Translations under genes and position numbers: made by a program
Notes under the pieces: model-generated
What the model saw: only the letters and a program-made list of their open reading frames with translations
What the model was told of the DNA's origin: nothing
Database searches by the model: none
DNA from: Perna viridis
Taxonomy: Eukaryota
Direction of reading: 5' to 3'
DNA length: 64,000 bases
Assembly: GCA_037379345.1 (NCBI GenBank)
Contig: CM074525.1
Span: 13,321,275 to 13,385,274, forward strand
Shown here: positions 7,360-40,027 of the stretch, in pieces
Layout: every line of letters starts with the position of its first letter
How positions within the stretch are numbered: the first letter of the stretch is position 1

Positions 7360-8556
7360 TTAATCTACCACCAAAACCATTTCACTACTTGGTCTTGTGT
7401 AAGTCACATTTTTGCCGTCCCTATGAATGCGGACACTAGCTTTTCTCACTTTACCATCATCGCTCTCGATGGCTTCAACAATGATTCCAACAGGCCATTC
7501 ACCTCTATACAGAGTCTTGTCTCGTAATAGAACTACGTCACCAGATTTCAAGTTTTCATTGTCATTGTGCCACTTTCTTCGCTTCTGCAGAGAATATAAA
7601 TAGTCCGACCTCCATTGCTTGCAAAAGATATCTGACAGCATCTTGACGTGTTTCCATTCGGCTCTATAAATGCCTTTCATGTTCAAAGAGTCCACTTAGA
7701 CAGGTAAGTAATCTTGTTTTCCGGTAAAAAGCATCGATGGACTTAGAATTAAAGGCATTTCAGGATCCGATGATATATCAGCAATGGGTCTAGAGTTAAT
7801 GATTGCTACAACTTCTGCTATGAAGGTAAGAAGAGATTCATTTGTCAATGTTTTGCTCGAAGATGTTAAGATAACTAAGTCTAATATTCTCCTTGTCACA
7901 CCAATTAACCTTTCCCACACTCCTCCCATGTGTGAGGAGTGGGGAGGATTAAATTTCCAAACGGACCCGTTTTCACAAAGATAGTTCTTGACGGCTTTAT
8001 CTTCCACATGAATAGCTTCTATGTCTAGATTGTCAGTTGCACCTATGAAATTTGATCCACGGTCAGAACGAAAAACTTTGACCGGTCCTCTAATTGACTG
8101 AAATCTTCGGAGAGCGTTTATGAACGATGAACCTCTCATTGACTCGATAAACTCAATATGTACTTCCCGGGTTGTCATGCACGTAAAAAGAATAGCCCAT
8201 CGCTTACTATTCGATGATCCTTGTCTCGTCTTGTGGGTCAATACGTTCCAGGGTCCGAAGGTGTCCAGACCGACATACGTGAAAGGTGGACCCGATGTAA
8301 GTCTGTCCTCTTGTAAATCAAACATTTTCTGTTCTTGGAATTTTCCTCTAAGCTTTCGACATACTACACATTTCTGAATGAATGAAAATATCAATCTCTT
8401 TGAACCGATAATCCAGAAACCAGCTCTCCTCAAGGCACCCTCCGAAAAAGGTCTACCCTGATGTTTCACAGCATTGTGGTAGTGATCTATGAGTAATTTT
8501 GCGACATGTGAATTTTTCGGAATTATGATCGGGTTGTTTTCCCTGTCGGAAGACAT
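7360..8556 (-). pseudogene. BEL/Pao integrase (Zn finger, DDE core, C-terminal domain)
   Basis: ORFs 7696-8556 and 7360-7695 are in frame and separated by a stop. Confidence 0.9.
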
Positions 8557-10021
8557 CCTGTAGCTTTGCTTAATCGTCCACCAACACGAAGTATTCCTGA
8601 TAAGTCAGGAAATGGTGAAAGCGCACTGATCGATGATCTCGATGAAACGTTTTGTCCTTGTGTAAGTAAGTCTATCTCCTGTGCAAATACCGATTTCTGA
8701 ACTTCCTTTATGACATATTGTTCAGCTTCGTTAATTGCATCAACTGATATGTAATGTTCGCAAACATGCCATCCTTTACATGACTGTCTGTCTGATCGAT
8801 AGTTCCTAGCGATGTGTTTCAACAGCGCTATTCCTTTGAGAAGCTTTTTCCAACTTGAAATGTTCTCGAAACGATAGACGATTGATCCAGAAGTATCAAG
8901 ACTAGTTACGTTTACGTTACATTCCGGCCTCACTTCCTTATCTAGATTCGGAGTTACAAGCGGAAAAGAAGGTAAGAGTCCACTATTACTACCACACATT
9001 TTCAAAAATGGTGTACCATTTAGCCAAGTGTTATAATCGTCGCTTTCCAGATTAGATAAATATCTAGTTCCACTATCGGCTGGATTCTGAAGCGTTGGTA
9101 TTAAATTCCACTGTGACGAGTCTGACATTCTGAGTATACGATCAACTGGATTTGACACGTAAGTATGAAAACGTCTCGTCTTGTTCCCGATATAACCTAA
9201 TACGACTTTGCTGTCACAGAAATACTTGATTGCTCCAAGAGGAATATCCAAGTTGTCAGATACAATACTAGCAATTTCCGTAGCCATGACTGCACCACGT
9301 TCAAGTCGGGGTATCGTATTCCCGCTTGCTGGGCTAAGCTTCGATTTACCCATGAAAAATCCTATATGAAGCTGTCCTTCATCGTCGACACCTCGTAAAT
9401 ACGCAGAAGCAGAAATAGCCTTCTCAGAGGCATCGGAAAATACGAAGATTGTTCATCTCACTGAAGGAGCAAGGAAAATACATGCGTGGAATACGAAAGT
9501 TTTTCAATGTCACAATTAAATTTCTCCATGCAATCCACTTATCTTGAAAGTCCGATGACAAAGGCTTTCTTAGTACTTGTTGCGCTCGTTTAATTAGATT
9601 TACGACTTTATTACTATCCGGCATCGAAAATCATCCACATAGAAGTCTCTACCGATGAACGACTTGACGTCCGGTCCATACAACCGATCACAATTCTCAA
9701 CTGTGCGTCTTAGTCCATATGTAGCCACAGCGGGAGAGGAAGAGTTTCCAAACACATGAACACACATGCGAAATTCAATAAGAGGGTTGTCGGGATTATT
9801 GTCTCTATACCAGAAGAAACGCAAAATATCTCTATCATTCTCATTCACGAAAAACTGATAAAACATTTGTTCAATGATCTTATCTTTCCTAAAACGTAGA
9901 AGAATGCCTAAGAGACTATTTGTTAAATCCGGACCGGTCATCATAACGCTATTTAGAGACCTTTGAAAATTGCCGATGAGTCAAATACGCCTCTTATTTG
10001 ATGTGGTTTGTTGGGGTGGTA

Positions 10022-10838: not shown

Positions 10839-12069
10839 CAATAGGTGGAGCTACTTCAGCTGCTTTGTTGTCGATAATTCTACGCATAAATTCAACAAAA
10901 TGAGCACGTTTCGTCTGGTCCTTTTTGAGCGAAATGTCTAATGTGTGAGCTCGTCTCAATGCCAATTCCTTGTTATTAGGTAGACGTTGACGGTTCGATT
11001 TGAACGGCAATGGAGCTGACCAGTGATCACTAGAGTCTTTTACGTATTCCTTGTCCATCATTGAAACTCCCGATCTTCTATTGACATCCCTACCTTTTCA
11101 TCGTCCTTAGTTTTACGGAATATGTCACCATAGGAAAACCAAGATTCACTTTGTTGTCTTGTATCAACTTCCTTCTTGACAGGTTCTTTCATGAATACAG
11201 TGTTCGCACAAGGTTCAAGCACAAGCTGTGCAGTTCCGTGAAATGTATTTTGACGACTGACAACACTTAAAGCAAATTCTATGGTCTTTCAAAATTTGTC
11301 TCTTCTCATCATAACTTTTGGCCTTGAACACCCTACAAGTTGCTAAACTATGCTTTGATTTGTGTAAAGGACAAAGTTCAAATTCTCCGTTTTCCTTCTC
11401 TCCGACATTCACATTAGTTCTACGATTGAATACCGTAGTTGCACTATGACCATTTCGACGATTTGAAGTTGGTTTCCTGGAATACACATTGTCTATATTA
11501 TGAAAGTTAAATGCTGGGTCGTTTTTGATTGTACAAATTTCTCTGATGAAATTCACGAAGAACGATAACGGCGGAAATGGAACACAATAGTCAGTTTTGT
11601 ATCTAGTTGCTCGAGATGTCCATTTCTCCTGGATGTTGTAAGGCAACTTTTCAACAATCGGATTAATTCCTGACGATGAATCGAAATAAGACAATAAATT
11701 AGCATATTCAGGATTTGCTTTTGAAGATTCTATCTGAACGAGAATTTCCAAAAAAATAACGTGATGTGTCCTTGCCTCCAATTTTAGCGAATTTCTGAAG
11801 TTTACCGTTTCTTTGATAACCCAAATTCAACCAGACACTCTGCGCAATTAAACGTTTTATTGCAAGATAGTGTCATTATCCGCAACAGTTCCTTTTTGGC
11901 CAACTGGCATAAAAGTCCGAAAATGGATTTCACGAAGTAAATATTTGATTTACGAAGTAAATATAGTGACTCAAATAATATTCATAACGGCTACGTCAAT
12001 TAACTTAATGGCATAGAACTGTAAAGGTGTGATATCCGCAACATCGTACCTCAATTAATTTCTTGAGAA

Positions 12070-13875: not shown

Positions 13876-16190
13876 CATAGACATAGACATAGAAATAAAG
13901 TCGGCAAGACATGAAAACATTAAACATAAGCTCTTTTAAGCTTTTGAACCGATAAACATGATATTTACAGTCATACATAATCATGCAGGTAAGTAAAACA
14001 AGACGTACATATACACACAGAAGACATTTAGACAAACATAAAGAACAAATAATTATATCAGTCAGTAATATGGTATGAGAATATAAGCACTTGAAGCATA
14101 CAAACACTAAACAAAATTATTACTACTACTAGCTAAAGAATAAAATAATAATCAGATAAGGAATAAACCTACCGTGCAACTAAAACAAAGTAATTAAAAA
14201 AAATTAATAAAACTGAACCAAAAAAAATGTAGTAAGTATGGTTGGTATGCTGCATCAGTAAGAAAGTTTTAGTCTGATTTTTTGCATACAAGACAAGTAC
14301 ATTCTTTACCATTCCAGAAAGATAATTGACTTTTGAACTGATTAAAATTTGAAATTTGCATGAAAGATTCTGGCAATGAATTCCAAAGAGCAGGTGCAGC
14401 ATACCTGAAAGATCTCTTACCATAGCTAGTAGTTTCCAAACTTGGAATCTGCAATAAATTTGTGTATCTAAAATTATACTTGCGGTCTTTCTTTTCAACA
14501 AGATTTGATAAGACAGGAGATGCTAAATTGTTAAGTTAAATATTTCTATTGCCATTGTTCTTGTTCTTTTTATATACATTGTTGGCATTTTTGCCTTGAT
14601 TAAAAGATCTTCATATGTTGAAATATAGTCTTCATAAACAAATCTTAGAGCCCTTTCCTGTATTATCTTCAATTTTTCGAGAATCAACTTCTGAACAAAA
14701 ATGCCATGATAGTGGGCAAAAGTTAAAATTTGACTGTATAAATGTGTGAAATATCGTTAGTTGATTTAATTTGCCCAAGCTTTTACCTATTCTTTTTAAA
14801 ATATTTACCTGTTGCACAGCCTTTTTACACAAATTTTGTATATGGGAATTAAAATTTAGTTTAAAGTCTATGTCTACTCCGAATAATTTTACAGTTTCAT
14901 CACAGCTTATTTTTGCAGATCCAGTATCAAAAGTGGGTGTTTTATCGAAAGTCTTTTTGCCAACAGCTATGGCCTGAAACTTTTTAGGATTTGCTTGCAT
15001 ACAATTAAAGTGAAACAAGTTTATCAAAATAGTACTTTCTGATTGTAGTACATCTATTACTTCATTAAAATTTGGCGAATGAAAAGATATTGTGTTGTCA
15101 TCAGCAAAGTTGTATAAATCTCCTTTATGAATAACATAGAAAATGTCATTTATAAGCACGTTGAACAGCAAAGGACCCAAAATTGATCCTTGCGGAACCC
15201 CCTTTTGAATTTTGCCCAGCTACTGACACAAGAGCCAATCTTTATTTGTGGTTACGCCCTGACAAATATGATAATAAAATGTCAGTAGACTTTTTGTTAA
15301 GACCATAGTCTGATAACTTACAAATTAAAATATCATGTGTCATTGACAGGTCCATAAGAGATGCTGCCACATATTCATTATTATCTAACGCCTGTTTCCA
15401 GTCTTCTAATAACCTTAATAATGTTATTTGACAACCATGGCCTTTTCGAAATGCAAATAAAATTTATCAAAAATAGTTTCAAAGAAAGTAGACAACTGAT
15501 TAGCTAAAACTTCGAATATTTTTGAAGGAATAGGCAGTAAACTGACTGGTCTGTAGTTGCTCTCTGTAAAAGGGTCATTCTTTTTATATAATGGAGTGAT
15601 TTGTGCCTCTTCTAGTCTGCTTGGAAATATTGAAGTTTCTATTGAATGGTTAACTAGTTTATTATTGTTGGCACTAAGGATGGTTTGCCATATTTCATGA
15701 GTTTAACTGATATTTTATCAATTCCTGTTGCTTTCTTCACATTAAATTTGTCAATGACCTTTGATACAAAAGATTCATTTGTTGGAACAAATTCAAAGTT
15801 TCTTTAAATCCTTTTTTTCAATCTTCTGAAGGCTTGGGTAGTTACTCTAATCAAAATTATAATCTTTACCTATTTCTTAGGCAACATTTACAAAAAAGTC
15901 TTTAAATACCTCTGAGACTTTTTTGTTATAATCTCATTTTCTTCTTGTAATATAATTTTGTTTTGTGTACCTTTTGATTTTTTGGAGAAATATAGTTTGA
16001 TGGTTTTCAAAAATCAGTCTGTTTATAGCCTCCCCAACATCTTTCTTGAAAATAAACATTTTCAGATTTTCTTTTCAGTTTATTTATTAAATTCCTTTTT
16101 GTTCTATTTTTTCCCCAATTTTTATCATTTTTGACATTGAGATATTTATTATAAAGCATTTCCTTTTCATATATTGCTTTTAAGCCTTAA
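13876..16190 (-). mobile_element. CR1/L2-type LINE 3' portion (RT plus 3' UTR)
   Basis: NYRPVSLLP, GVPQGSILGPLLFN, FADDNT, NPKKFQ, FNFCPL.W and YGKRSFRY motifs; (ctatgt)n tail at about 13876-13893. Confidence 0.88.
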
Positions 16191-25045: not shown

Positions 25046-26879
25046 AACATCATTGAATGTTTGTTGCTCGCTTTTAAAGTTCTGTTAAGCTGTGGAGTGC
25101 ATTTTACTTGTTCCGAATTGTTATAACTGTCACGTGGGTATTCTCTCAAATTTTCAAGTTGACATTTTAATGAGTACTCAAGGGAACCAAAGCTAAAGTA
25201 GTAATCAAAAGAATCCAGGGGCAAAGACCAGGATGTTGGTCAGACGGTTATGGTATTACATAGATTTTGTGATTCATGTCAAAGACAGTAAGATATTTTT
25301 ATTGACGTGCTAGATAAGCATTAGTTGAATGAAATGTTGCAACACTTGTGCGTTAGATAAACATATGGGGTAACCATTTGAACAGATGTGACTTTGGTGT
25401 ATTAGTCAAATGTGGTGACCTGTCGATCTCTTTTCATTTAGATGAATTACATGATCCACATTGGCGCATTAGATAGAAATTTCAGGGGACTCTTTGATCT
25501 GTTGTGACTTTGAAAAATAAAGTGATCCTAGCTTTGATACTTTATCACACTGGTGTATATGATAGACATATTAAGTGATCATTTGATCTGTTGTGACTGA
25601 TACATAAGACAAATGGGATCATCCTAAAACATGCTCTGACGAATATGTCCTTCGTGTCTGTATGGTGTACAGATGGTGTAGACAAATAACAAAACATCGC
25701 TACATATATGTGTTCACTTTAAGATGTATTTAACAGACGGACAGACAGGTGTATATAACAGGTCAATTAGACAGTGCACATAGACCCCTAGAGCTCTGGT
25801 CCTTTGTGTACAGTGTACTGATTGAAGTGCCTTGAAAAAGGCAGTTAAGTATAGTTCAATCTAAAAATCATTTATGTAAATATTTTGAACACAACTATTT
25901 AGGTTTGAAAACCAGTAAATAAAGTATACAAATTTTTCATATAAAATTTGTACATCCAAGTAACACTTTAATTACTAGGCAGTTAACACAGATCTCTGCA
26001 TGGTTTTTTAATAGAGCAATACTTTAAAGTGAATGTGCTGATGATAAATAAAAGAACTCAATTAGTTGGTGACATTTTAATAATAAAAAAACAAATTATT
26101 TGCAGAAGAAATATTGATCAATGTACTTATGTAGAAATGTAATTATAAAATTAAGGAAAAAAATGTAAAAGTGAAATCATAACTTTATATAAAACCATCA
26201 CAGAAATTACAAAGTAGATGAAAACTTTAAACAATACATCACCAACAAATAGAGCAATACTTTAAAGTGAATGCACTGAAAAAAGAACTCAATAAGTTGG
26301 TGACATTTATATAGAACTATCACAGAAATTACAAGTACATGTATTAAAAACTAAAACAACTAAAACAGAACAATAAATCACCTACAGTGTACATTACAGA
26401 GATTTATTTACAATAAAAAAGTTTGATAATGAAATAAATATAAATTAAAACAGAATTATAAATCACCTACACATTACATTACAAAGAGCTATTTACAGAA
26501 AATTTAAAAAATACAACTTTTTTCATCAAATCTTAAAAATATTTGCATTTTCTGTTTCAGTGAAATGCACTGAGTAAAACAAGACCCCACAAGTGTTGTC
26601 AATTATCAGATATAAAAATATTACACCAACATGAAAAAAATCTATTTTTCTCATTCGAAACACTGAGTTGAATAAAACAAGATCCCCCAAGTGATGTCAA
26701 ATACTTAGAATTAAAAAGATATTTAGATTCTGGTGAAAAAAAAATGTATAATTTATAGAGATCTGACTAATAGTAATCAATATTTTATGTGACTCTTTAA
26801 AAGGTTTCTGAGAGTTTCATTGTATGTTACTTCTAAAGGTGTTCGATCCCAACACCTGTGATGGATCAGCATTTCTATC

Positions 26880-27940
26880 TAACAACAATTGTAAAATATC
26901 GGTATGTCCTTCATTACGCACATCAGACAATAAATCTTTATGTTCATTCATTACTTCCTGAATATTTCCACCTTTAGTTATTAACAGTTTTACAATATTA
27001 AGATGACCATAAAGACATGTATAATACAAAGCTTTCTGAATGTCAGCACCTTTAGTTATTAACTGACATATAATATCAGTATGACCTTCCTCACACACTT
27101 CATACAATAAATCTTTATGTTCATTCATTACTTCCTGAATATTTCCCCCTTTAGTTTTTAATAGGTTTACAATATTAAGATGACCATAAAGACATGTATA
27201 ATACAAAGCTTCCTGAATGTCAGCACCTTCAGTTATTAACAGTTCTATAATATCAGTATGACCACTCCTACACACATCATACAATAAATATTTATATTCA
27301 TTCATTACTTCCTGAATATTTCTACCTTTAGTTAACAGTTTTACAATATCAGTATGACCTCTCCTACACACTTCATACAATAAATCTTTATGTTTATGCA
27401 TTACTTCCTGAATATTTCCACCTTTAGTTATTAACAGTTTTACAATATTAAAATGACCTTTACTACATGTATAATACAAAGCTTTCTGAATGTCAGCACC
27501 TGCAGTTATTAACAGTTCTACAATATCAGTATGACCTCTCCAACATACTTCATACAATAAATCTTTATGTTTATTCATTACTTCCTGAATATTTCCTCCT
27601 TTAGTTATTAATAGGTTTACAAAATTAAGATAACCATAACGACATGTATAATACAAAGCTTTCTGAATGTCAGCACCTTCAGTTATTAACAGTTCTATAA
27701 TATCAGTATGACCTTTCTCACACACTCTATACAATAAATCTTTATGTTCATTCATTACTTCCTGAATATTTCCACCTTTAGTTATTAACAGTTTAAGTAT
27801 AAAAAGATGACCATTTATACAACTATAGAACAATGATGTTCTTCTATAACTATCTTTTTTGTTTAAATTACATTCTATAGAAATGAGATATTTAACTAAT
27901 TGACAAAAACCTATCTTTGATGCTTCAATCAGTGGTGTAG
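26880..27940 (-). repeat. Ankyrin repeat array; 177-bp unit of alternating 26-aa and 33-aa repeats
   Basis: Translation of 26817-28475 shows ALYYTCxxGHLNIVKLLITKG alternating with LLYEVCxxGHTDIIxLLIT; near-identical at DNA level. Confidence 0.92.
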
Positions 27941-29599
27941 TAATATAATGATAGGAATGCATGAATACATGATCTTTGATTACACTGTTCATACATTTAT
28001 CATCTAATTCAAGAAATAATGTTTTACATGATTCTTTGTTCTGTTCCATGTATCTCATCAATTTGTCTTGAAAACTGTGTTTTTTTAATTGTTGGTTGTA
28101 AAATAAGGATTTTCCATCTTGTTCTTTGAGACCTTTGAAAATTCTGTCAAAGTAAAGATGTTCATCTTCTTCTGATAAATACAAATATGAATCATCTTGT
28201 TCTGGATCTTGACCTGGAAAAACACTTTTAAATCTGAATTTTTCAGCTATGAATGATGAAGGTGAATATGTAATGAAAAGTTCTGGATGTTGACGACCAC
28301 AAATTACAGCAACCATATCATACAGTTTATCATGGGCTATTGTGTACGCTGATCCTGTTTTCTTGACATAAGTTCCATCAAGTCGTTTATATGTATCTCT
28401 TAACTGCTTTTTATCCATCTCAATGCCAAGATTTATTATGAAATTAGTTACTATGTCAGTAACTTTCTGTCTCATTTTTTTCTGGTATTCTTCTAGGATT
28501 TATATATGTTTCATCAAATCCATCACTGAACAGTACACATAGAATTAAAGCACAGAACTCAATTTTGTTGGTTTCTATCCTTATTTTTATATCATTCATA
28601 ATACCTTTAATGGGAGATTTGAAAATTTCAGTAACTTCCTTGACTGTTTTTTCTTTTGACATCTTACAAAGTAAAGGAAAATAAGGATACTTGTCCAACA
28701 TTTTACCTAATTTCTTTATATATCATTCTCAGATAGATTTGTGTATTTTTGTATCATTTTGAGTCTTTCATCATGAGTCAGTTGATGCTCTTTTGATTCT
28801 AGATCACATGAGTGTTCAGTTAATATCTTCAAAGACTTAAATTTTGTATCCTTGAATAATCTCATCTGCCTTGTCATACCATGTCTGCAAGTCTTGTTTG
28901 TTAATAAAGTTCTTCCCACAGATATCATCTACTACAAAAACCTGATTCTTCTTAATATCTCGGTTTTGTATGATATCGGCAGGACAAAATGATAGAATAA
29001 TATCATATCCTTTCTTTTTATTTAGTTCCAGCGCCACATGGTGTATTATCGAAGACTTCCCAGACCCAACACCTCCAGTAACTACAACAACATCTTCCTT
29101 TTCAATCAACTCGGTCACATATTTTGTTGCCCTGGTAACCGTAAACATTGCTTCCTCTTTTTCCCATCCTTCTATATTCATTTTGTGTTTTTCTGAAATC
29201 AGATTTAACATTTCAATAATTTACATTTAATCATTTAGATAATTTACATGTTAATTCCTCAATATTATTAGATTGTCCAATATTATTTTAACGAGATGAG
29301 CAGCGAGTTTAATACATAAGTTTTATAAGCGCTGCAAAGTTTCCTTTTGTGACCATATTTTCGTGGAGTGCTACATGAGGTCACGCATGTTGTACTGCTT
29401 TACGATAATTTTCATTTCATTCTCACTTGACTGGTGTTAAGTGATTTTATTGTGTCTGTTGGAATACATAAAACTAAACAAATTTTACCAATTCCCAACA
29501 TACAATCTTAGTGACATAAATAGTATTTCCTAACAAATGTAAACTGCAGTTATTTAGTCCCATTCAGGTTTTGATTATGTTCTAAATCTTCTTTTAATA

Positions 29600-32070
29600 T
29601 TTGAATTGTCAGTCAAATGAACTGTTGTTGGTGTATGTTTTTGTCTGTCAGAATTACTGTTGTTGGTGTCAGCTGTTGTCTGTCACAATTACTGTCGATT
29701 GTGTTAGTTGTTGTCTATCATAATTTTTGACGTCACATATGTTGTACTGCTTAACAATAATGTTCATTCTCACTTGACTGGCGTAAGGGATTTCAAATAA
29801 AATAATGATAATGATATATATAATGATTCAAAATTATATTTTATTTATTTATTAGTCCCACTCAGGTTTTGATTACGTTCTACTTTTCTAAATCTTCTTT
29901 AAAATCTTTAAATGTTTGAAATTTCTATTTACAATACCATAATTACTTTTGTCTGCATTAGTTTTTGTCTGTGATAATTACTGTTGTAAGTGTCAGTTGT
30001 TGCCTGTAATTAATTACTGTTGATGGCACTACTTCATGTCTGTCACAATAACTGTTAATGTTTTAACTGCTGTCTGTCATTATTACTGTTGTTGGTCTAA
30101 GTTGTTGACTGTCAAAATTACTGTTGTCAGTGTTAGTTATTGTCTGTCATAATAATTTTTGATGATGTCAGTTGTTGTCTGTCACAATTACTGTTGTTGG
30201 TGTAAGTTATTACTTGTCATAATTAATGTTGTTGGTCTAAGTTGTTGACTGGTAGTGTTAGCTGCTGTCTGTCATAATTACAATTGGAAGTGTTAGATGC
30301 TGTCTGTCATAATTACCTTTGGTGTCAGTTGTTGTTTGTCATTTTTGCTGCTGTTGAAAGTTGCAGTCAAAGTTACTGTTGATAGTGTTAGTTGTTGTCT
30401 GACATTATTACTGTTGGTGGCATTAGTTGCTGTCTGTCATAATTACCATTGTTGGTGTCAGTTGTTGTCTGTCATTATTACTGCTGTTGAAAGTTGCTGT
30501 CACAATTACTGTTGATAGTGTTAGTTGTTGTCTGACATTATTACTGTTGAAAAAGTTAATTTTATCAGTCATAATTACAGTGATTGGTGCTATTTGTTGC
30601 CTGTTACAATAACAGTTGTTTGCGCTATTTGTTGCCCGTCACAATAACTGTTGATGGGGTTAGTTCTTGTATGTTTGTATTGCAGTTGTTGAAATGAGTG
30701 GTTGTCTGACAAAAAAACTGTTGATTGTGTTAGTTTGTGGTCTGTCAAAATGACTGTTGATGGCGAAAGTTGTTGTCTGCCTTCAATTCTGTTGTTGGTG
30801 GAAATTGTTGTCCATCATAATTACTGATGGTTGTGTGATTTGTTGTCTGTCATAATTACTGTTGTTGGTGAAATTTGTTGTCCGTCTTAAATACTGCTGT
30901 TGGTGTAAGTTGTTGTCAATCTTCAATACTGCTGTTGGTGTTAGTTTTTGTCTGTCAAAATAACTGTTGGTTGTGTGATTTGTTCGCTGTCATAATAACT
31001 GTTGAGGGTGAAAGTCGTTATCTGTCTTCAATATTGTTGTTGGTGTTAGTTGTCTGTCATAATTACTGTTGTTGGTGTAAGTTGTTGTCCATCTTCAATA
31101 GTGCTGTTGGTGTTAGTTGTTGTCTGTCATAATTTACGTTGTTGAAAATTGCTGTCCGTCAAAGTAACTGTTGGTGATTTAATTTTTGTCTGTCATAATT
31201 ACTGTTGCTGGCATTAGTTGTTGTCTGTCATAATTACTGTTGTTAGTGAAAGTTGTTCATTGTCAAAATAAGAGTTGATGGTGTTGGTTGTTTGTCATTA
31301 TTACAGTTGTTGAACTAAGTTGTTGTCTGTCATTATTACAGTTGTTGAACTAAGTTGTTGTGTGTCTTTATTACAGTTGTTGAATTTAGTTGTTGTAAGT
31401 CATAATTACTGTTGCTGGCATTAGTTGCTGTCTGTCATAATTACAATTGTTGGTGTCAGTTGTTGTCTGTCATAATAAGTACTGTTGTAAGTTTATGTCG
31501 CATAATCTGTTGATAGTGTAAGTTGTTGTCTGACATACATGTAATTACTTTTGAAAGTATTAGCTATTATCTTTCCTTAATGTTGACAGTCATAATAACT
31601 GTTGTTGGTGCAAGTTGTTTTCAATTATTTTTACTGTTGGAAGTGTTACTTGTTGTCAATTAAAATTACTTTTGAAATGGTTAGTTGTTGTTTGCCATAT
31701 TACTGTTGACAGTGCAAGTTGTTGTCTGCCATATTTCTGTCGATGAAGTTAGTTGATGTCAGTCATTATTAGTTGTTAAATTTAGTTGTTGTATGTCATA
31801 ATTACTGTGGATAGTTTAATTGTGTAAGTTGTTGACTGTCATATTTAATGTTAGTAACATTTATCTTCAATGCTGTTGTTGGTGGTATTTGTTGTCTGTC
31901 ATAATTACTGTTGTTGTTAGTTTCTGTCACAATTACTGTTGATAGTGTTAGTTGTTGTCTGTCACAATTACTGTTGGTATTATATGTTGTCTGTCATAAT
32001 GCATGCTGTTGTAAGTTGTTGTCTGTCATAAGAACTGCTTATAGAGCAAGTTGTTGTCTGAATTATGTCT
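29600..32070. repeat. Degenerate 35-bp minisatellite (tgttgtctgtcataattactgttgttggtgtaagt), intronic
   Basis: Dozens of diverged units, interrupted at about 29730-29930. Confidence 0.92.
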
Positions 32071-32992
32071 GTCATCTTTACTGTTGTTGTTCTTTGGCAC
32101 CAGCACTGTCTTTGTTATTTCTATTTTTATATTTGTCTTAATTATTTTGAATGAATTTGTTGTCTGATGTAGTTTTCTTTTTTGTATCTTTATTTTGTTG
32201 TTTTTGATGTTTATCTTTTACAGTCCTTTTTTGTCAGTCATTTCCTCCGTTGTGAGTCCTGTTGTTTTTTTTTATTTTGTTGTTTTTTAAGTTTATTCAT
32301 GATTCTCCTTTTTTGTCATTTCCTCTGTTGTCTGTCAGTCTGTCATTATTTATGTTGTTGTCTTTGATGTTTATCTATTCACATTTATTCCTTTTTGTCT
32401 GTCATTTCTTCTATTGTATATCAGTCTGCGGTTGTTTATTTGGTTGTCTTTTGATTTTTAAATATGATTCTCCTTTGGTTTTGTCTGTCATTTCTTCTGT
32501 TGTATTATTGGATCGATAAAGCAATATTATTTATCTACCTCTCATATTCCAGTGTAAAATTTGTTCTTGTTCGTCTGGAAAGTAAATGATTCATTAAAGT
32601 AATAATATGTACTACTTCCCTATATCTTAGTAAAATTCTTATACAAATCTCATGTTTATCTGGAATTTTAAATTTCAAGAAGGTTTGCAATGTTTTTTTG
32701 TTTTGTTTTTAATTCCTTAAGCTCATACTTAAGGAACAATCATATCAACTTTCACTGACTTCCATTAAGTAATTTCGGAGGAGAAAATACTAGAAAGGAA
32801 TAGCATTAAGAAAAGTGAAAAATGTCGAAAAAGGTCAATAACTCCACAAATGGCTAAACAGAATAACAGAAATATTTGGCCACAGATAGATCTCATCCTG
32901 CTGAACACTTTTGTCCTATGTCAGAATTTGGATAAACCTAACAGTATTGTAGATAAATGGAAACAACTTTAGTCAAGGTGAGGCAATAATAT

Positions 32993-32994
<2 letters not shown>

Positions 32995-33048
<54 letters not shown>
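32995..33048. repeat. Poly-T tract
   Basis: More than 50 consecutive T. Confidence 0.95.
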
Positions 33049-33050
<2 letters not shown>

Positions 33051-34294
33051 GCTGTTCCCCTTTTTTCCTTTTGTATTGTTTGTTGGTTTGGAAAACGAGT
33101 CCAGTGAATATTTGAACAATGATAACTGAAAACTTTACAAAATATTTTACTAGGATTTGTCACAGATTACATTTTGAACAGTTGGGCCAAGTACGATGGA
33201 CACACCATTCAAATTTAACGGAGTGCAATCAAATGTTTAAAAGGTTTTCATCAGAATGAAAGTGGCCATAGAACTTAAAAATGTACGGACCATACAGACG
33301 TACGAAATCAGCAATTTATATTGAGGTGATAAGAATGGTGGGTGTGCTATCAGGCCATAAAAGAAGCTAAACAGCTATTTATTTCATATCTTGTATATAC
33401 TTAGACAATTTATCACTACGCCTTTCCATAGTAATGATTGAGCAATAGGACGAACTAATTGACCTCTAGATGGAGTCAAAGGTCATTATTTCTGCCCTTT
33501 TCTTCAAAATTTTCAATAACTAGCCGGAATAATAGAGGACTGTATAGGATTCAACTAAACCGAAACAAGTAAAGTACACATCATTTCACTAGCCAAAATC
33601 AATTTTTACTAGCCCCGGGTTTTGGACTAGTGGTTAAAGGAAAGCACTGTAATAGTTAGAACACATTGAAATGGTCAACTGTAATTACAAATTAGCTTAC
33701 AGATCACCTTAGTCCTAATATTTCAAATTTTCATTTTGACAGTTGGCAAAATTTTAATAATACTTCATCATCAATTAAAAGAATGAATTGATTGACCTGT
33801 ACATTCTTAATATCACCAGATACAGATATCTATATCATTCCTTTTTCACTGGACCATCAACAATCAGCACAATGGGTGCCTTACAAGAAGCAGGAATTAC
33901 TCATCTACCCAGATCACCTAGGATTAATGGGATTCATGCTGTTTGTTTTGTCTGTGTGTACTGTTTCAGTCACTCTGTATAGTACTATTAATTCTACATA
34001 TTTTACCAGTGTAGTGTTCTAGACAAAGTGTTACCCTTATTTATACCGTGGGCATTGCTAATTTTCCTAAATACCTTTATTTTTTTTAAAGTAAAACAAT
34101 TTGGCCCCATTATACATGTATTACAGCCTATTATCTTACCTTGTCTTTTATATAATATCTCAATAGATTCTTTTGAACAAGTTGGCCCTATGATACATGT
34201 ATTACAGCCTATTATCTTACCTTGTCTTTTATATAATATCTCAATAGATTCTTTTGAACAAGTTGGTCGTATGATACATGTATTACAGCCTATT

Positions 34295-34720
34295 ACAACA
34301 GGGTTATGTTGCTACAAGATTGAAGTCATCACTACAGAAGTTTTGTGGTCGTCATCATGAACTCGCGGATCGTTATGGTGTATCCATCTGCACCATGAAA
34401 ACTGATTTATTCAACGGGTCATAGTTTTCCTTTCCTTGTTTGTCTACCCCAGACTTGACTTTTTATGAGCAACTCGGCGGGTGTTTCTAGAAAAGCAGAG
34501 GATGCTTACGCTAATGGTGCACCTGGTCCATGCTCCCAGTTTTTAGTAGAGTAGGAGTTGCTCATTTACTTTTGTTACTTTGTATGTATGATTTGAGTTA
34601 CTTTATGTTCTTTGTTGTGTATGCCTTTGTTGTGTATGTCTGTTTTCCATGTCTGGTCTTTGTCCCTGGATTACATTCTTTTGATTACCGCTATGACCTT
34701 GGTTCCCTTGATTACTCTTT
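34295..34720 (+). mobile_element. 5'-truncated PLE inserted in an 84-bp tandem array
   Basis: QGYVATRLKSSLQKF fragment plus complete 3' end; flanked by copies of gaacaagttggtc.tatgatacatgta.taca.cctatta. Confidence 0.85.
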
Positions 34721-35822
34721 GAACAAGTTGGTCCTATGATACATGTAATACATCCTATTATCTTACCTTGTCTTTTATATAATATCTCAATAGATTCTTT
34801 TGCTTCTTTCATTTCTGCATTTGCTTTTTGACACAGTATCAATTGATTCTGTCTCCAGGTCTGATGCCTTGTCATCACCTTTCTGTTTCTGCGTTTTTTT
34901 AACCGTGAAATTGTAATTGAGCAATAATATTTTCCTCAAAAGTTTATCAACGAAATTTGATCTTTATCATTCTAGTGCTCGATTAATAAAATTTGTAGTA
35001 TGTCAAAAAATGTGTCTGATCAAGCGCAGGTGCGATTCAGACTTGAGAATGGCTAACCAATAGATTGATCTAGTGAATACCTATTCTAAAAATAAAGTTA
35101 TAACTATTTATAAGTCAGGGAATAGAGGAACATAGTCCAAATAATGACAACAAAATCTTTCAAAAAATAGTTTTTATTTTTTTTAGATTTGCCATGCCTG
35201 ACAGACTTATTTCACTGAAAAACGGCAAGTCCGAGGTGCAGTTTTTTAGTCCCGGACGTCGGGCTCTAGGAATTTTTATCCCCTGTTAATGTATTTGAGA
35301 ATGAGATTGAGTTAATAACATACATGTATGAGTAAAAATTGTCGCTTTGATTGGTCAATTCAGTCAACATTTAGTATTTATGCGAGTTCATCGACACACT
35401 TTATCGCTTCTTCTGTATTGTAGATAACCATTCAGGTGTGTAGCACACCGTCTCTACACTGTAAGACTGTTACAGTCTGTACATTCTTTGCTTCTAACTT
35501 ATCTACGGTTATGCCGTTTTCTCATAGGAATGTAACATTCCGAGAGAATGCTTTGGTTTAGATTTATTCGGACCTTTCGGCTTCTTCATATGCTAATTTA
35601 TCATGAAATAATTAGTATTTTTGGTTTTCTGTCAAGCTAAAAATATAGCCCCGTAAACAAACATTAGAGTGTTAAGCCAGTCACTTCCAGTTGCATTGCC
35701 TTTCCGGTTAATTTTGAAGTTGTCAAGCATTTGTTTTATATCAAAGGCTTTGTACTTAGTCAATTAAATTTTGTGTTTCAAAGTGTTATATAAACTGGCC
35801 ATTATCACTGAGAAACTTGCAC

Positions 35823-36526
35823 ACACTACACTCAGCGACTTGTGTTTCTCTAACACTCAAGTCAGAGTTTTAAATCTGTATTAGTCGGTGAAACACGATG
35901 TCAGTCGGATTTTTTCACGGTGAAATGTGAGTGTAACACCCACCCAGCTCGGACATCGTGTATTCCAGTTGTCAATTGTGTACGGAGAACCACCAACCCT
36001 GATTTTACAAGTCCGTCACTCGAATCAAATTACAAATATCAATACTTTCAAAGTGTTTTATTTATATTTATAAATAATAATTATCAATTTACAAATGTAA
36101 AATTAAAGTATCAAAAGATTGCATTATTACTTGATAAAAATACGAAGTCATATTTTTACATGATATCTGCCACTCATTGGATGTAGCTGTAAAAAAAAAT
36201 CTCACACCAAAAAATGAGAAACATGTAAAAATATTTAAAAAAAAAAAGAAGATGCCGTTTTTTTAAGGACATGAGTAATTTTTTATTTTAACTGGAGTGC
36301 TCCGAATTACCTGAGAAACTGAAACACAATATACACCGTATCTTATAATGAATTCCCTGTTATGCCTCATTGACAACATTGAATTTTACGACTATTGCAA
36401 CATACAAATGTTCGGTGTTGGCTGGGTGGAATCTGGGTGGTAAACACTCAAAATGTCGGTGTAACACCATGTTTCACTCAGGTCGGACTTAAGTGTTAGA
36501 GAAATAAATGTCGTTGAGTGTAGTGT
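35823..36526. mobile_element. MITE-like element with imperfect terminal inverted repeats
   Basis: acactacactcagcgacttgtgtttctctaacactcaagtc versus the reverse complement of gacttaagtgttagagaaataaatgtcgttgagtgtagtgt. Confidence 0.65.
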
Positions 36527-36569
36527 ACATGTACAGAACAGAAGACTCCCGTTACATAAGTATACAGTT

Positions 36570-37135
36570 CCTGTTGATAGCATTGTTGAAGTGAAAGTAT
36601 TTTACACTGGTTTCCGTTTTTGTTGTTTGCATTAGTCAAAGTGCTCACTTTATCAATTGATTTCATCTTTAAAATATGATTCAGTAGGAGTTTTATTCGT
36701 TTCGTTTCTTAGTTTACTAGTACCCAATGAAAACGAAAATAAAATTCAATAACATTAAATTTCTGGTTAATGACAGCTCTGCGTAATTAAAGAGAATGTA
36801 TTCAAAAATAAAACATCAAGAACAAGTTCATAAATACATTACAAGTGTGGTCCTGTCTTACATGATGGTATATTCTCCTAATTCTGCCCACCGAATGCTA
36901 TCAGATGTGCCATGATTTGCATAGGTTTTTCCCGACAGCAAATCATACAGTAAATAGAAATATCGAACTCGGATGGGATAATTTCCGGAAAATCAAATAG
37001 TTAAAAAAAAACATATTTATTAATATTACAATTTATAAGTAATTTCCATACTTTAACATCACATCAAAACAATAGAATGAAATGAACAAATTAATTACAT
37101 GATTCAGAAACAAGACTTATAGTCTTCTACCAATC
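36570..37135. repeat. Dispersed repeat, copy B (partner at 310-880)
   Basis: Colinear similarity to 310-880. Confidence 0.8.
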
Positions 37136-37589
37136 CTATGATTTGCTTGATTTTAGTGGGAGATGAATGTTTGATTTTCAAAAAGTGCAGATCTGAATGT
37201 AGAAATGATTATCCTTGTGTGAAAGTATATAGCATATCTAGACCGGAAAAAAAACATCGTTTGTTTGGTGGGTTTTTCTTCACTGTGAATCAATTTACCA
37301 TTGGCAGTGTCTGCATTTTATATGGACTGGTTCTTTAAAATTACTGAAACTTTTGAAGAGGTTAGTATTGTTGGCTATGGTAAAATGAATACTACCGTTT
37401 TTCCTACACGTAACCTGAATGGTATTTTCCATTTTTTTAACACGTGCAATACAATATTTTGACATTTGTAGCATATGCATGTTTGTGCATAGTGTTATGT
37501 AATGGGTCAGTAAACAGTAAATGGAAATACACTGATTGAATTAATTGCTTTTGACAAGTAAATATTTTGGTTCGATTGAACTTAAGAAA

Positions 37590-38835
37590 GTTAGCCATTG
37601 GTCAGAGTTAGAATGTACTGTTTGATGGAATTTTGTTCCATTCTAGAGTAGCGAAAGCAAAGAGAACAAAATGTCTAGACCGATACCAATTTGTTATACT
37701 TGACAGTCTTATTAAACAAGTTCTTGTGTTGTATCATGATTCACCAATGGCAGCGCATGGTGGAATCCAGGATACACTGGATACAATCAAACAATCTTAC
37801 TATTTTGAGTTTATTGCAAATGTCACAAAAGAAGTGCTTAGAAGTAAAACCTGAGTATACACCTAGTTTTGTACATCACTGTTTAGGTGCGTGTGAACGA
37901 ACTCATTCAAGTCTTGCTGAACGTTTGACACCGTATATGATAACTATGTCTTTAGATGGTATGGTTCCAGCAATTACATTTGCCATGAATTCATCTGTTA
38001 ATTCAAGTACAGGATTTTCAGCATACGAAATTATTTATGCACAAAGGCCAAAATTTCCACTGACTCAAAATTTGATTCCAAGGGATTTACTAACATTATC
38101 AAAAGATGTAAGGTCTTATATAGCTTCCCAGCCAAATAAACTGAATGTTATACAAGAGCAAGTCAGACAAAATATCGAGGAGGCACACGTACAAATGCTT
38201 GAAAATGCAAATAAAGATGTAACAGAAGAAACGTTTGAGAAAGGTGATTTTGTTTTTCTTTTTGAAAAACCTACAGGAGACGGTCAGAAATTGTAAAATA
38301 AGTTTACGGGACCATTTATTATTCACGAGGTACCATCTGATCACATGACAATGCTACGTGATCCATAAATCAAAAGACAGTTTCCGGAACTGATTCACAA
38401 AGAAAGACTGAAGCTTGCTCATATTCGAACACCAAATCCGTCACCGTTTTTCAAAGTCATTCATTCTATGAAAGATGTAAATTTGTCAGTGAGTATACCC
38501 AAACGCATCTGCCAACAGAATCGAAGAATGAAGCGACGATTGTACGTTTTGACCGAAGGCGGACCGTTCGTCAAACTAGAAAACCAATCAGATACCGTGA
38601 TAGTGACCACGTAGATCCGATCAGAGACATTCCAACCTTCTTTGTGATGTCAGATACAGATGGGTTTCACAAGATAAAACGTGTATTGGCTCAAAGGACA
38701 ACTAGAGGAAAGAGAGAATGTTTAGTTCATATCTCCGGGGAGCCTGCTGAAAATGCAGTCTGGGTTCCATTTTCTAGATTAAATACTAAGACAAAATTAG
38801 CTATTGAAAGGCTGTTTTGTAAATATTCGTATTAA
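37590..38835 (+). pseudogene. Ty3/Gypsy integrase fragment with GPF motif and chromodomain-like C-terminus
   Basis: YHDSPMAAHGG (Zn-binding), GACERTH, NSSVNSSTGFSAYEIIY, KFTGPF, then FHKIKRVLAQR...ECLVHISGEPAENAVWVP; core partly deleted. Confidence 0.8.
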
Positions 38836-39514
38836 AAGCAATTTTCTTTTAGGAGAAGTCTTTAGATTTTTTATTATTTGGTTGACTTTTCCGGACTTAT
38901 ACTTTAATAGTTGAACAACGTGTCCCAGTTGTTCACAATAGTATCACTAAGTTAAAACTTGAGATACATAAAATGACCGAAGTTAGTGTGTTACTGTGTG
39001 TAATCGGAAGGTCTGTGTCTAAACAATGTATGTCGTCGAAAAAAAATAAAAAAGGGGACCCCCTTACCACTTATGAACCAACTTCGAAGACGGTGGATGG
39101 GACCAAGGCCAATTAGTCCATCTTGGGACCAGGATGATATGTTAGCTCTACTTTAAAATTAGGACTAGTATTTTCCAAAATTTAGTAGGTACCTTTTATT
39201 AGTAGTTAATAAAATCATATCGAAATTTCAGAACTATTCGTCGACCACAACTCAAGTTATCTCACGAAAACGAAGTGTCCCCAGACGACTAGGACAACTA
39301 CGACGGCGACGACTTTGCCAACATTAAACGACCGTGAATAGTTAGTGGTTGTATAAAAAGAGGTATTCCTCCTTACCACTTATGTTCCAACTTCTTTGCT
39401 GGTGGCGGTGCAAGTGTGTAAATAACTGTAGAGGGCAATAATAAGGGTAAAAATTAAAATATCATCCTGGGAGGGGGTTAATTTTAATAAGTGGACACAA
39501 ATTCGCTGATATTT

Positions 39515-40027
39515 TAACCCGATGTCATATGATATTTAGACCCCGCGAAATATTTAACCCGGGGTTAATATATCGTGTGAAATAATGATTTCGGAGTTAT
39601 TCTAAGATAACTCCCTTATGATATCTTAACCCCCATAGCGGGCGTTAACTTATCGCAGAAGGGGGTTAATGTATCACAACATGGTGGGGGTTAAAATATC
39701 ACAGTAGGAAGGTTAAATATATCTGCAGGGGAGATAATTTATTGCAGCAGTGGGTTAAACTATCACAGTAGGAGGGGGTTTAGATGTTGAAGTTATGGGG
39801 GATTTTTAATAAGAGGCATGTGAAATTATTACAGTACGTGGGTTAGCGTATTGTAGCAGATGATTAAGATATCGCAGGAGGGGATGATTTATCATAAGGG
39901 GAGTGTAAAATTGTCGCAACAGGACGGTTAATAAATATTACAGCAAAGGGGGATTTGTCGCAGTTTGGGGTTACTTTATCGCAGCAGGGGGTAAAATATC
40001 ACACTTAATATCGTATGACACCGGGTC
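39515..40027. mobile_element. MITE-like element with ggggttaa subrepeats
   Basis: acccgatgtcatatgatatt is inverted relative to aatatcgtatgacaccgggt; degenerate ggggttaa.atatc.cag units lie between them. Confidence 0.55.

What the first reader, a model, noticed from the sequence alone, without database searches (positions are those of the whole stretch)
26880..27940. Natural DARPin-like sensor: homogenised ankyrin array with hypervariable binding positions on an NLR-like NTPase
Seen: the 59-aa two-repeat unit is nearly invariant apart from two residues before GH. Long repeats read VC-EK/WR/RR/RS/EE-GH; short repeats read C-IN/RY/SK/LY/LY-G. One short repeat is missing (IVKLL-TKGRNIQEV), consistent with unequal crossover. 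Alternate repeats are only 26 aa and lack the usual loop. Known: these helix-1 positions are the ligand-contacting positions randomised in DARPins, and repeat shuffling diversifies fungal NLR sensors. Inference: a repeat-shuffling, diversifying immune receptor system in a bivalve nSTAND3-ANK family.
Basis: partly seen in the sequence, partly recalled or inferred. Interest (0 to 1): 0.8.

Follow-up and report, generated by a model that had tools for sequence, protein, structure and literature searches.

The report
Broken copy of hypervariable ankyrin sensor
This is a recently disabled copy of a mussel-like bivalve gene family whose ankyrin-repeat sensor arrays are kept almost uniform except at a few surface positions that change fast, much like fungal immune receptors and laboratory-made DARPin binders.

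Summary
The array is real and lies on the minus strand (26820-27938). It has an N-cap, alternating 33-aa and 26-aa ankyrin repeats (177-nt double unit), one head/tail hybrid repeat and a terminal repeat. 'Nearly invariant' is overstated: the two pre-GH residues hold 24-33% of the differences, about 4x expectation.

I pooled 47 repeats from this copy and two intact paralogues (1264 and 1005 aa). The 26-aa repeat shows 74.5 nonsynonymous against 4.5 synonymous changes (dN/dS 4.3, P=5e-4), concentrated at codons 3, 4, 7, 8, 20 and 26. The 33-aa repeat shows no excess (1.2). NTPase and linker give 0.4-0.6. Hybrid repeats occur in all three genes, and identical units sit at different array positions.

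The window copy itself is disabled by a 95-nt deletion in nSTAND3 plus two frameshifts.

In the wider family (over 100 loci, many with HEPN exons upstream), canonical repeats vary at the beta-turn and pre-GH positions, which are DARPin library positions.

Verdict: a pseudogenised member of a bivalve STAND-ankyrin family that evolves like fungal high-internal-conservation NLR repeats. Immune function and concave-face location are inferred.

The parts
26820..27938 (-). Ankyrin array, aa 180-552 of the ORF. In minus-strand order: N-cap 27938-27837; B1 27836-27738; A1 27737-27660; B2 27659-27561; A2 27560-27483; B3 27482-27384; hybrid 27383-27288; A4 27287-27210; B4 27209-27111; A5 27110-27033; B5 27032-26934; terminal repeat 26933-26820; stop codon 26819-26817.
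   Evidence: Segmentation; Pfam Ank_2 E=7e-59; TRF period 177; AlphaFold2 pLDDT above 90 over most of the array.
27288..27383 (-). Hybrid repeat of 32 aa: the head of a 26-aa-type repeat joined to the long tail of a 33-aa-type repeat within the shared IVKLL(I)T motif, with one further codon lost.
   Evidence: The same kind of hybrid is found in the intact paralogue at aa 545. The reciprocal kind is found at aa 486 (1264-aa gene) and aa 614 (1005-aa gene). Model confidence dips to 75 here.
27939..28475 (-). Helical linker between NTPase and array. It is in frame with the array. The ORF's ATG at 28475 corresponds to an internal Met of the intact paralogues.
   Evidence: dN/dS against the paralogues is 0.5-0.8.
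28476..28836 (-). Middle of the NTPase/winged-helix region, thrown out of frame. There are 2 extra bases at about 28722-28723 and 1 extra A in the A-run at about 28476-28482.
   Evidence: DNA alignment with two intact paralogues; stop codons seen.
28837..29211 (-). N-terminal part of nSTAND3 with Walker A (GGVGSGKS) and Walker B (VFVVDD). It is truncated by a 95-nt deletion whose junction lies between 28859 and 28858. There is also an in-frame 3-nt deletion near 28991/28992.
   Evidence: Pfam nSTAND3 E=4.9e-15 covers only profile positions 1-95 of 155, against 1-152 in the intact paralogues. Alignment.
26777..26851 (-). Relic of the family's canonical C-terminal capping repeat, readable only in the +1 frame. 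The frameshift is shared by all three subfamily genes.
   Evidence: Three-frame translation of the three gene tails, compared with the in-frame cap of L033.
29193..29198 (-). Candidate splice acceptor (tttcag) just upstream of the NTPase exon. It and its flanks are conserved in both intact paralogues. It was not tested.

Best explanation
The window holds a recently disabled paralogue of a lineage-specific subfamily of the bivalve nSTAND3-ankyrin family. These are STAND NTPases with an NLR-like layout, and many wider-family members carry a DZIP3-type HEPN exon upstream.

In working members the C-terminal ankyrin solenoid is most likely the ligand sensor. It would hold the NTPase switch off until a target binds, after which the protein oligomerises and activates its N-terminal effector.

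The sensor diversifies in two ways:
1. Unequal recombination or slippage between near-identical 177-nt double units, and exchange of units between paralogues, changes repeat number and order and makes head/tail hybrids.
2. Diversifying selection keeps a few inner-helix and loop residues of every second (26-aa) repeat variable, while the scaffold is kept uniform.

Shown here: the architecture, the homogenisation, the hybrid repeats, the excess of nonsynonymous change and where it falls, and the broken NTPase of this copy. Inferred: ligand binding, exposure of the hot residues on the binding face, the switch mechanism, and an immune or non-self role.
For: Broken copy:
- There is a 95-nt deletion without GT..AG ends, a 2-nt insertion and a 1-nt insertion relative to two intact paralogues of 1264 and 1005 aa.
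- nSTAND3 coverage is 1-95 of 155 here and 1-152 in the intact genes.

Diversification:
- The 26-aa repeat (22 copies, 20 unique) has 74.5 nonsynonymous and 4.5 synonymous tree changes, dN/dS 4.3, P=5e-4.
- Codons 4, 7, 8, 20, 26 and 3 each exceed the neutral expectation at P between 1e-3 and 5e-10.
- Without the window copy the result holds: dN/dS 4.9, P=2e-4.
- As a control, the NTPase and linker of the same genes give 0.42-0.59.

Shuffling:
- Four hybrid repeats occur across three genes.
- Identity is 0.88/0.93 within genes and 0.86/0.92 between genes. Units with 100% identical DNA sit at different array positions, while flanking dS is about 0.1.

Family:
- There are at least 112 matching stretches in the genome.
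- HEPN_DZIP3 exons lie 7-24 kb upstream, on the same strand, of at least 12 paralogues.
- Canonical paralogues show pN/mean pS of 1.9-2.4 at the two pre-GH residues (2.4 and 1.9) and the beta-turn (2.2 and 2.3), and far below 1 in the framework.
- The pre-GH residues align to DARPin positions 13/14.
- The predicted fold is an ankyrin-like solenoid.

Precedent: fungal NLR ankyrin repeats show the same regime (PMC4986451).
Against: - No function has been tested for any family member.
- No HEPN or other effector exon was found within about 10 kb upstream of this subfamily's three genes.
- The 33-aa repeats show no significant excess.
- For the two pre-GH codons alone, the codon-own N:S test is not significant (16:1, P=0.28). 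Their significance rests on the array-wide synonymous rate.
- Trees of 78-99 nt repeats that recombine are unreliable, so absolute counts are rough, although the N:S ratio is little affected.
- Exposure on the concave face could not be measured.
- Like repeats are about 79% identical in protein, below the 85% used to define the fungal class.
- The whole subfamily carries a frameshifted C-cap, which could mean reduced function.
- RNA reads that fit at 97% carry fixed differences, so transcription of this copy is not shown.
Confidence: 0.68

Rival explanations
1. The 552-aa ORF is itself a working product: an ankyrin-only protein started at the internal ATG (28475). It could act as a decoy or regulator of its full-length paralogues, or the locus could serve as a reservoir of repeat units for exchange with them.
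For: - A 1659-nt frame is still open in an AT-rich genome although the upstream part is broken.
- The ATG coincides with a conserved internal Met.
- Units identical to those of intact paralogues are present.
- Strand-consistent RNA reads fall on the region.
Against: - The open frame is equally expected if the disabling events are recent; flanking dS to the paralogues is only about 0.1.
- The RNA reads carry fixed differences, so they may come from paralogues or other alleles.
- The array has its own damage: one codon lost and a Gly-to-Arg change in the hybrid repeat, where model confidence drops.
- No promoter or transcript start was shown.
Confidence: 0.12
2. The frame breaks are assembly or haplotype artefacts, and the locus encodes an intact receptor in most individuals.
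For: - Two of the three breaks are slips in a dinucleotide run and a homopolymer run, a typical long-read error type.
- Contigs of other runs carry the undeleted sequence next to 28857/28858 (table 7).
Against: - A 95-nt deletion is not a typical consensus error.
- A 58-nt unitig of an independent run (X2, record 15, no mismatches) crosses the junction with 30 and 28 letters on its sides. This is just under the tool's bridging criterion.
- The undeleted contigs match the paralogues' sequence, so they are explained by those genes.
Confidence: 0.1
3. There is no diversifying selection. The pattern reflects a few old repeat types that were copied around, plus relaxed constraint in a decaying gene cluster.
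For: - The subfamily shares a frameshifted C-cap.
- At least three of its loci are broken: the window copy, L035 with six stops, and L033/L034 fragments.
- Some units are exact copies.
Against: - Relaxed constraint gives dN/dS near 1, not 4-5.
- Two members keep 3.0-3.8 kb open frames, with NTPase dN/dS of 0.42.
- 20 of the 22 26-aa repeats are unique, with 9 different pre-GH dipeptides.
- The same hot positions recur independently in canonical paralogues.
Confidence: 0.1
4. The family is a sensor system, but not for pathogens. It might act in allorecognition, defence against transmissible cancer cells, or surveillance of transposons and their RNA.
For: - Fungal counterparts act in allorecognition (PMC4986451).
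- Transmissible tumour cells and RNA elements have been proposed as triggers for bivalve expansions of death-fold/STAND/HEPN proteins (PMC8195603; PMC9646362).
- The window is rich in retroelement ORFs.
Against: Nothing here separates these targets from viral or bacterial ones. The sequence evidence is the same for all of them.
Confidence: 0.15

Closest known systems
Fungal NLRs with highly internally conserved ANK/TPR/WD repeats (e.g. [quoted passage not shown] 2014, PMC4986451)
   Same: Both have a STAND NTPase with a C-terminal ankyrin array whose repeats are kept alike. Both show repeat-number differences and shuffling. Both show positive selection at a handful of positions in the inner helix and the loop.
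   Different: - The NTPase here is nSTAND3, not NACHT or NB-ARC, and the host is an animal.
- Protein identity between repeats (about 79%) is below the 85% used to define the fungal class.
- This subfamily has a 26/33-aa double unit without beta-hairpins.
- Variation among alleles was not tested here.
DARPins (designed ankyrin repeat proteins; 6 randomised positions per 33-aa repeat, PMC6590788; positions 2, 3, 5, 13, 14, 33 from my own knowledge of Binz et al. 2003)
   Same: Both have a consensus-like uniform scaffold with variation focused on the two residues before GH (positions 13/14). In the canonical paralogues variation also falls on the beta-turn (positions 2/3, with 5 weaker).
   Different: - This is a natural, germline-encoded system.
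- The window's subfamily has lost the hairpin after every second repeat, and the remaining loop is invariant and predicted helical. Variation therefore sits on helix 1 (DARPin positions 9, 10, 13, 14) plus positions 26 and 32.
- The superhelix fits DARPin and ankyrin structures only moderately (TM 0.4-0.53).
Bivalve expansions of DZIP3-like HEPN / NACHT / STAND genes (pearl oyster, PMC9646362; Crassostrea, PMC8195603) and Mytilus nSTAND3-ankyrin proteins
   Same: They share the domain vocabulary (HEPN, STAND NTPase, repeats), large clustered copy numbers, and bivalve hosts. Mytilus proteins are the nearest named relatives, at about 40% identity over the NTPase and linker.
   Different: - Those papers describe copy number and architectures, not homogenised ankyrin arrays with hot positions.
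- The Mytilus relative I inspected has divergent, not homogenised, repeats.
- Nothing with the 26/33 array was found among 5.8 billion proteins; the best match was 36% identical.

Membership tests
Ankyrin repeat (Pfam clan Ank) | Significant match to ankyrin repeat profiles and a helix-turn-helix solenoid fold | tested here: met
   Ank_2 E=7e-59 and Ank E=9e-42. PDB sequence hits to DARPins and ankyrin-1 at E about 1e-39. Foldseek top hits are all ankyrin arrays.
Ankyrin repeat (canonical 33-aa form) | A beta-hairpin or loop of about 7 residues between successive helix pairs | tested here: not met
   Every second repeat is 26 aa. HMMER opens a 7-residue gap after it, and AlphaFold2 predicts a continuous helix into the next repeat. 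The other loop is predicted as a short helix.
nSTAND3 NTPase (PF20720) | Full-length match with Walker A and Walker B in one reading frame | tested here: not met
   The window copy matches profile positions 1-95 of 155 only (E=4.9e-15), because of a 95-nt deletion and frameshifts. The intact paralogues meet the feature, matching 1-152 of 155 at E about 5e-20.
NLR in the strict sense (NACHT or NB-ARC plus LRR) | A NACHT or NB-ARC domain above threshold and leucine-rich repeats | tested here: not met
   NACHT scores E=0.0055 at 17 bits, below the 26.7-bit cut-off, and there is no LRR. The protein is NLR-like only in the broad STAND-plus-repeats sense.
High-internal-conservation repeat receptors (fungal NLR class, PMC4986451) | Repeats at least 85% identical over at least 100 aa | tested here: not met
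   Mean protein identity among like repeats is 0.74-0.88, and 0.79 in the window. DNA identity is 0.88-0.93.
High-internal-conservation repeat receptors (fungal NLR class, PMC4986451) | Positive selection at a few repeat positions | tested here: met
   The 26-aa repeat gives dN/dS 4.3-4.9, P at or below 5e-4, with six hot codons. Canonical paralogues are hot at the pre-GH and beta-turn positions.
High-internal-conservation repeat receptors (fungal NLR class, PMC4986451) | Repeat-number polymorphism between alleles | not testable with these tools
   Paralogues have about 11, 17 and 27 repeats and carry hybrid repeats. Short contigs show alternative junctions (table 5), but alleles cannot be told from paralogues.
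High-internal-conservation repeat receptors (fungal NLR class, PMC4986451) | Hot positions on the concave binding face | tested here: inconclusive
   Alignment puts codons 7/8 at DARPin positions 13/14. Codons 3, 4, 7 and 8 share one helix face opposite the conserved L2/V5/C6, as read directly from the sequence. No model coordinates were available to measure exposure.
HEPN-STAND-repeat tripartite architecture (bivalve DZIP3-HEPN genes) | A HEPN_DZIP3 exon upstream on the same strand | tested here: inconclusive
   It is present 7-24 kb upstream of at least 12 wider-family paralogues. It was not found within about 10 kb upstream of the window gene or the two intact subfamily genes. The only trace is a 26-aa fragment with an R-x4-H motif in L036.

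The most novel reading that the evidence does not exclude
This bivalve carries a germline repertoire of a hundred or more intracellular STAND-ankyrin receptors whose binding surfaces are diversified as in a natural DARPin library: a uniform scaffold, hot beta-turn and helix-1 positions, and unit shuffling between arrays. It would be an animal counterpart of the fungal high-internal-conservation NLRs.

Within it, one young subfamily has invented a hairpin-less 26/33-aa double repeat that moves recognition entirely onto the inner helix of alternate repeats. Disabled copies such as this one may still feed repeat units to working paralogues.
Probability: 0.4. Interest if true: 0.75.

Novelty: new variant of a known kind. 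Interest (0 to 1): 0.58.

Why it matters
Repeat-based receptors that diversify through uniform scaffolds and hot positions are well documented in fungi, and are imitated in protein engineering. I found no description of this for animal STAND-ankyrin proteins in the searchable literature.

If the family is a working sensor repertoire, three things follow:
- It would show that the same evolutionary solution arose in a long-lived, filter-feeding invertebrate.
- It would give concrete residues to test for ligand specificity.
- It would offer a natural, hairpin-less ankyrin scaffold of possible use in binder design.

For this particular locus the message is more modest. It is a dead copy that still preserves the pattern.

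Tried and rejected
- Upstream effector exon. I ran tblastn with Mytilus HEPN-bearing proteins over the whole window, and with six HEPN exons of this genome over window 29200-40000 and 10 kb upstream of both intact paralogues. Nothing was significant. The effector of this subfamily stays open.
- Exact-sequence look-up of the 1005-aa paralogue in public assemblies: not on record.
- Search for the 26/33 array elsewhere: only canonical ankyrin proteins, at 36% identity or less.
- Reads. Contigs of older runs are too short to phase repeats. Raw RNA reads are few, lie in the orientation expected for a minus-strand transcript, and carry fixed differences. They show neither transcription of this copy nor allelic repeat-number variation.
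- The 95-nt gap as an intron: rejected. The segment present in the paralogues has no GT..AG ends and is coding there.
- Plus-strand reading: there is no ORF of 80 aa or more on the plus strand under the array.
- I did not run the large representative-protein search, because no claim here rests on the absence of distant relatives.

Full report
**What is in the window**

The feature lies on the minus strand. One ORF of 552 aa (26817..28475) contains a helical linker followed by an ankyrin array. Pfam gives Ank_2 at E=7e-59. Tandem Repeats Finder reports a 177-nt period at 89-91% matches.

Cutting the protein at the start of each first helix gives this order:
- an N-cap (27938-27837);
- five 33-aa repeats (type B, ALYYTC-xx-GH...KGGNIQEVMNEHKD) alternating with 26-aa repeats (type A, LLY-x-VC-xx-GH...GADIQK);
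- one 32-aa hybrid;
- a terminal repeat.

At aa 365-396 an A head is joined to a B tail inside the motif IVKLL(I)T that both types share, with one more codon lost.

That only reflects where the unit is cut.

**How uniform the array is**

The array is less uniform than stated. In the window 9 of 26 A columns and 15 of 33 B columns vary, and like repeats are about 79% identical in protein.

The two pre-GH residues hold 33% (A) and 24% (B) of pairwise differences, against 8% and 6% if variation were even. The enrichment is real, about four-fold, but it is not exclusive.

**This copy is broken**

Upstream of the ORF, the nSTAND3 P-loop part (28837..29211, Pfam E=4.9e-15, profile positions 1-95 of 155) and a middle piece lie in other frames.

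A genome search found two intact single-exon paralogues on the same chromosome piece, of 1264 aa (about 45 kb away) and 1005 aa. Their nSTAND3 match is complete, at positions 1-152 of 155.

DNA alignment with both shows the following in the window copy:
- a 95-nt deletion, with its junction between 28859 and 28858, which removes about 31 codons after Walker B;
- 2 extra bases near 28722;
- 1 extra A in the run near 28480;
- an in-frame 3-nt loss.

The 95-nt segment is coding in the paralogues and has no GT..AG ends, so it is not an intron.

A 58-nt unitig of an independent run crosses the junction without mismatch, but with 30 and 28 letters on its sides it falls just under the tool's criterion. 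I therefore read the window copy as a recent pseudogene. The other first-reader note on this locus (s1-766626) said the same, and I confirmed only that part of it.

**Where the variation falls, and whether it is selected**

I pooled 22 A and 25 B repeats of regular length from the three genes.

Counting changes on a tree of unique repeats:
- Type A has 74.5 nonsynonymous and 4.5 synonymous changes (dN/dS 4.3, binomial P=5e-4).
- Type B has 56.5 and 11.5 (dN/dS 1.2, not significant).

In type A, six codons hold 64% of the nonsynonymous changes:
- codon 4 (10.8 changes), codon 7 (9), codons 20 and 26 (8 each), codon 8 (7) and codon 3 (5);
- each exceeds the expectation from the array-wide synonymous rate, at P from 1e-3 to 5e-10.

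Leaving the window copy out changes nothing (dN/dS 4.9, P=2e-4).

As a control, the NTPase and linker of the same genes give dN/dS of 0.42-0.59 at dS of about 0.11.

Caveats:
- Repeats recombine, so trees of 78-99 nt are rough.
- For codons 7 and 8 alone, the codon-own N:S test (16:1) is not significant.
- In type B only codons 7 and 1 stand out (P=0.002 and 0.008).

**Shuffling**

- Hybrids of both polarities occur in all three genes: A head with B tail in the window (aa 365) and in the 1264-aa gene (aa 545); B head with A tail at aa 486 and at aa 614 of the 1005-aa gene.
- Repeats are as alike between genes as within them: DNA identity 0.86 against 0.88 for A, and 0.92 against 0.93 for B.
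- Units with identical DNA sit at different array positions in different genes, while the non-repeat flanks differ at dS of about 0.1.
- Repeat counts are about 11, 17 and 27.

This fits a shared pool of units moved by unequal exchange and conversion. Variation between alleles could not be tested: one contig skips 78 nt and five RNA reads join repeats in another order, but these may come from paralogues.

**Structure**

HMMER aligns the array to a DARPin (6mol). The pre-GH pair falls on DARPin positions 13/14, and a 7-residue gap follows each A repeat, so the hairpin is missing.

AlphaFold2 was run on the single sequence. Mean pLDDT is 83, and above 90 over most of the array. It predicts five helices per 59 aa:
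- the DIQK end of A extends the first helix of B;
- the IQEVMNE loop of B forms a short helix instead of a hairpin;
- confidence dips to 75 at the damaged hybrid repeat.

Foldseek finds only ankyrin arrays, at moderate TM-scores of 0.4-0.53. This is consistent with an ankyrin-derived solenoid of altered curvature.

Codons 3, 4, 7 and 8 lie on one face of helix 1, opposite the conserved L2, V5 and C6. That is read directly from the sequence. By homology this is the groove-facing side, which is inference. Codons 20 and 26 correspond to DARPin positions 26 and 32.

**The wider family**

- The protein has at least 112 matching stretches in this genome. nSTAND3 has 205 first-look candidates, of which 21 were scored and all passed the cut-off.
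- Most paralogues have canonical 32-35-aa repeats of the type TPLYVAC-xx-GHTDIVQLLLDRNADVSQC plus a loop.
- Within their arrays, the framework has pN far below pS. The two pre-GH residues and the two beta-turn residues reach 1.9-2.4 times the mean pS. These are DARPin positions 13, 14, 2 and 3. That each DARPin repeat has six randomised positions is in PMC6590788; the position numbers are from my own knowledge.
- HEPN_DZIP3 exons lie 7-24 kb upstream, on the same strand, of at least twelve such paralogues.
- None was found upstream of the three subfamily genes.
- The nearest named relatives are Mytilus nSTAND3-ankyrin proteins, at about 40% identity over the NTPase and linker, some with HEPN or CARD domains.
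- Nothing with the 26/33 array was found among 5.8 billion proteins.

**Comparison with what is known**

The evolutionary regime matches that described for fungal NLR ankyrin repeats: internal conservation, repeat-number changes, and positive selection in the inner helix and the loop (PMC4986451).

Expansions of HEPN, NACHT and STAND genes in bivalves are published (PMC9646362, PMC8195603). My searches found no account of homogenised ankyrin arrays with hot positions in them.

Tested and not met:
- strict NLR membership (no NACHT above cut-off, no LRR);
- the fungal 85% identity criterion.

The family therefore works like those systems without being a member of them.

**Verdict**

Only the 26-aa repeat class shows clear diversifying selection. 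The immune role is plausible but untested.

Noticed in passing
window 26777-26851 (minus); also the tails of L031 and L032: All three genes of the 26/33 subfamily share a frameshift just after NADP[ST]Q. The family's canonical C-terminal cap (..RTPLEVTYNETLRNLLKSHIKY, then a stop) survives only in the +1 frame, and the proteins end early in VLGSNTFRSNIQ.
   Followed up: partly
L033 (C15:26338000-26343000), minus strand, 395-aa open frame: This is a chimeric array. A/B-type hairpin-less repeats are followed by two canonical hairpin repeats and an in-frame canonical cap. It looks like an evolutionary intermediate or a recombinant between the subfamily and the canonical family. Its N-terminal part is broken.
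   Followed up: no
L008-L030 (canonical paralogues), second and third repeats: Canonical family members already have one hairpin-less junction (..LLITNGGNIQD followed directly by [AI]LCEAC-xx-G). The two repeats around it resemble the B and A heads, so the 177-nt unit may have arisen by amplifying this pair.
   Followed up: no
window 29606-31000: A 35-nt minisatellite of about 30 copies at 65% matches, with nested 63- and 133-nt periods, lies just upstream of the NTPase exon, in what would be the upstream intron or promoter region.
   Followed up: no
window 34006-34935 (minus): Tandemly repeated open pieces read ESIEILYKRQGKIIGCNTCIIGPTCSK. The same motif occurs upstream of the 1005-aa paralogue (L037). 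Another first-reader note links such repeats to a HEPN exon start. I found no significant HEPN similarity.
   Followed up: partly
window 7696-9353, 11215-11781 and 14632-15180: These are ORFs that look like retroelement parts, with integrase-like and reverse-transcriptase-like motifs. The gene sits in transposon-rich DNA. They were not scanned against profiles.
   Followed up: no
C15:13288000-13292500 (L035): A third subfamily copy lies in the same 60-kb cluster. It is 62% identical to the query and carries six stop codons, so it is an older pseudogene.
   Followed up: no
window 32976-33166: A long A/T homopolymer tract, which reads as a run of Lys codons on the minus strand.
   Followed up: no
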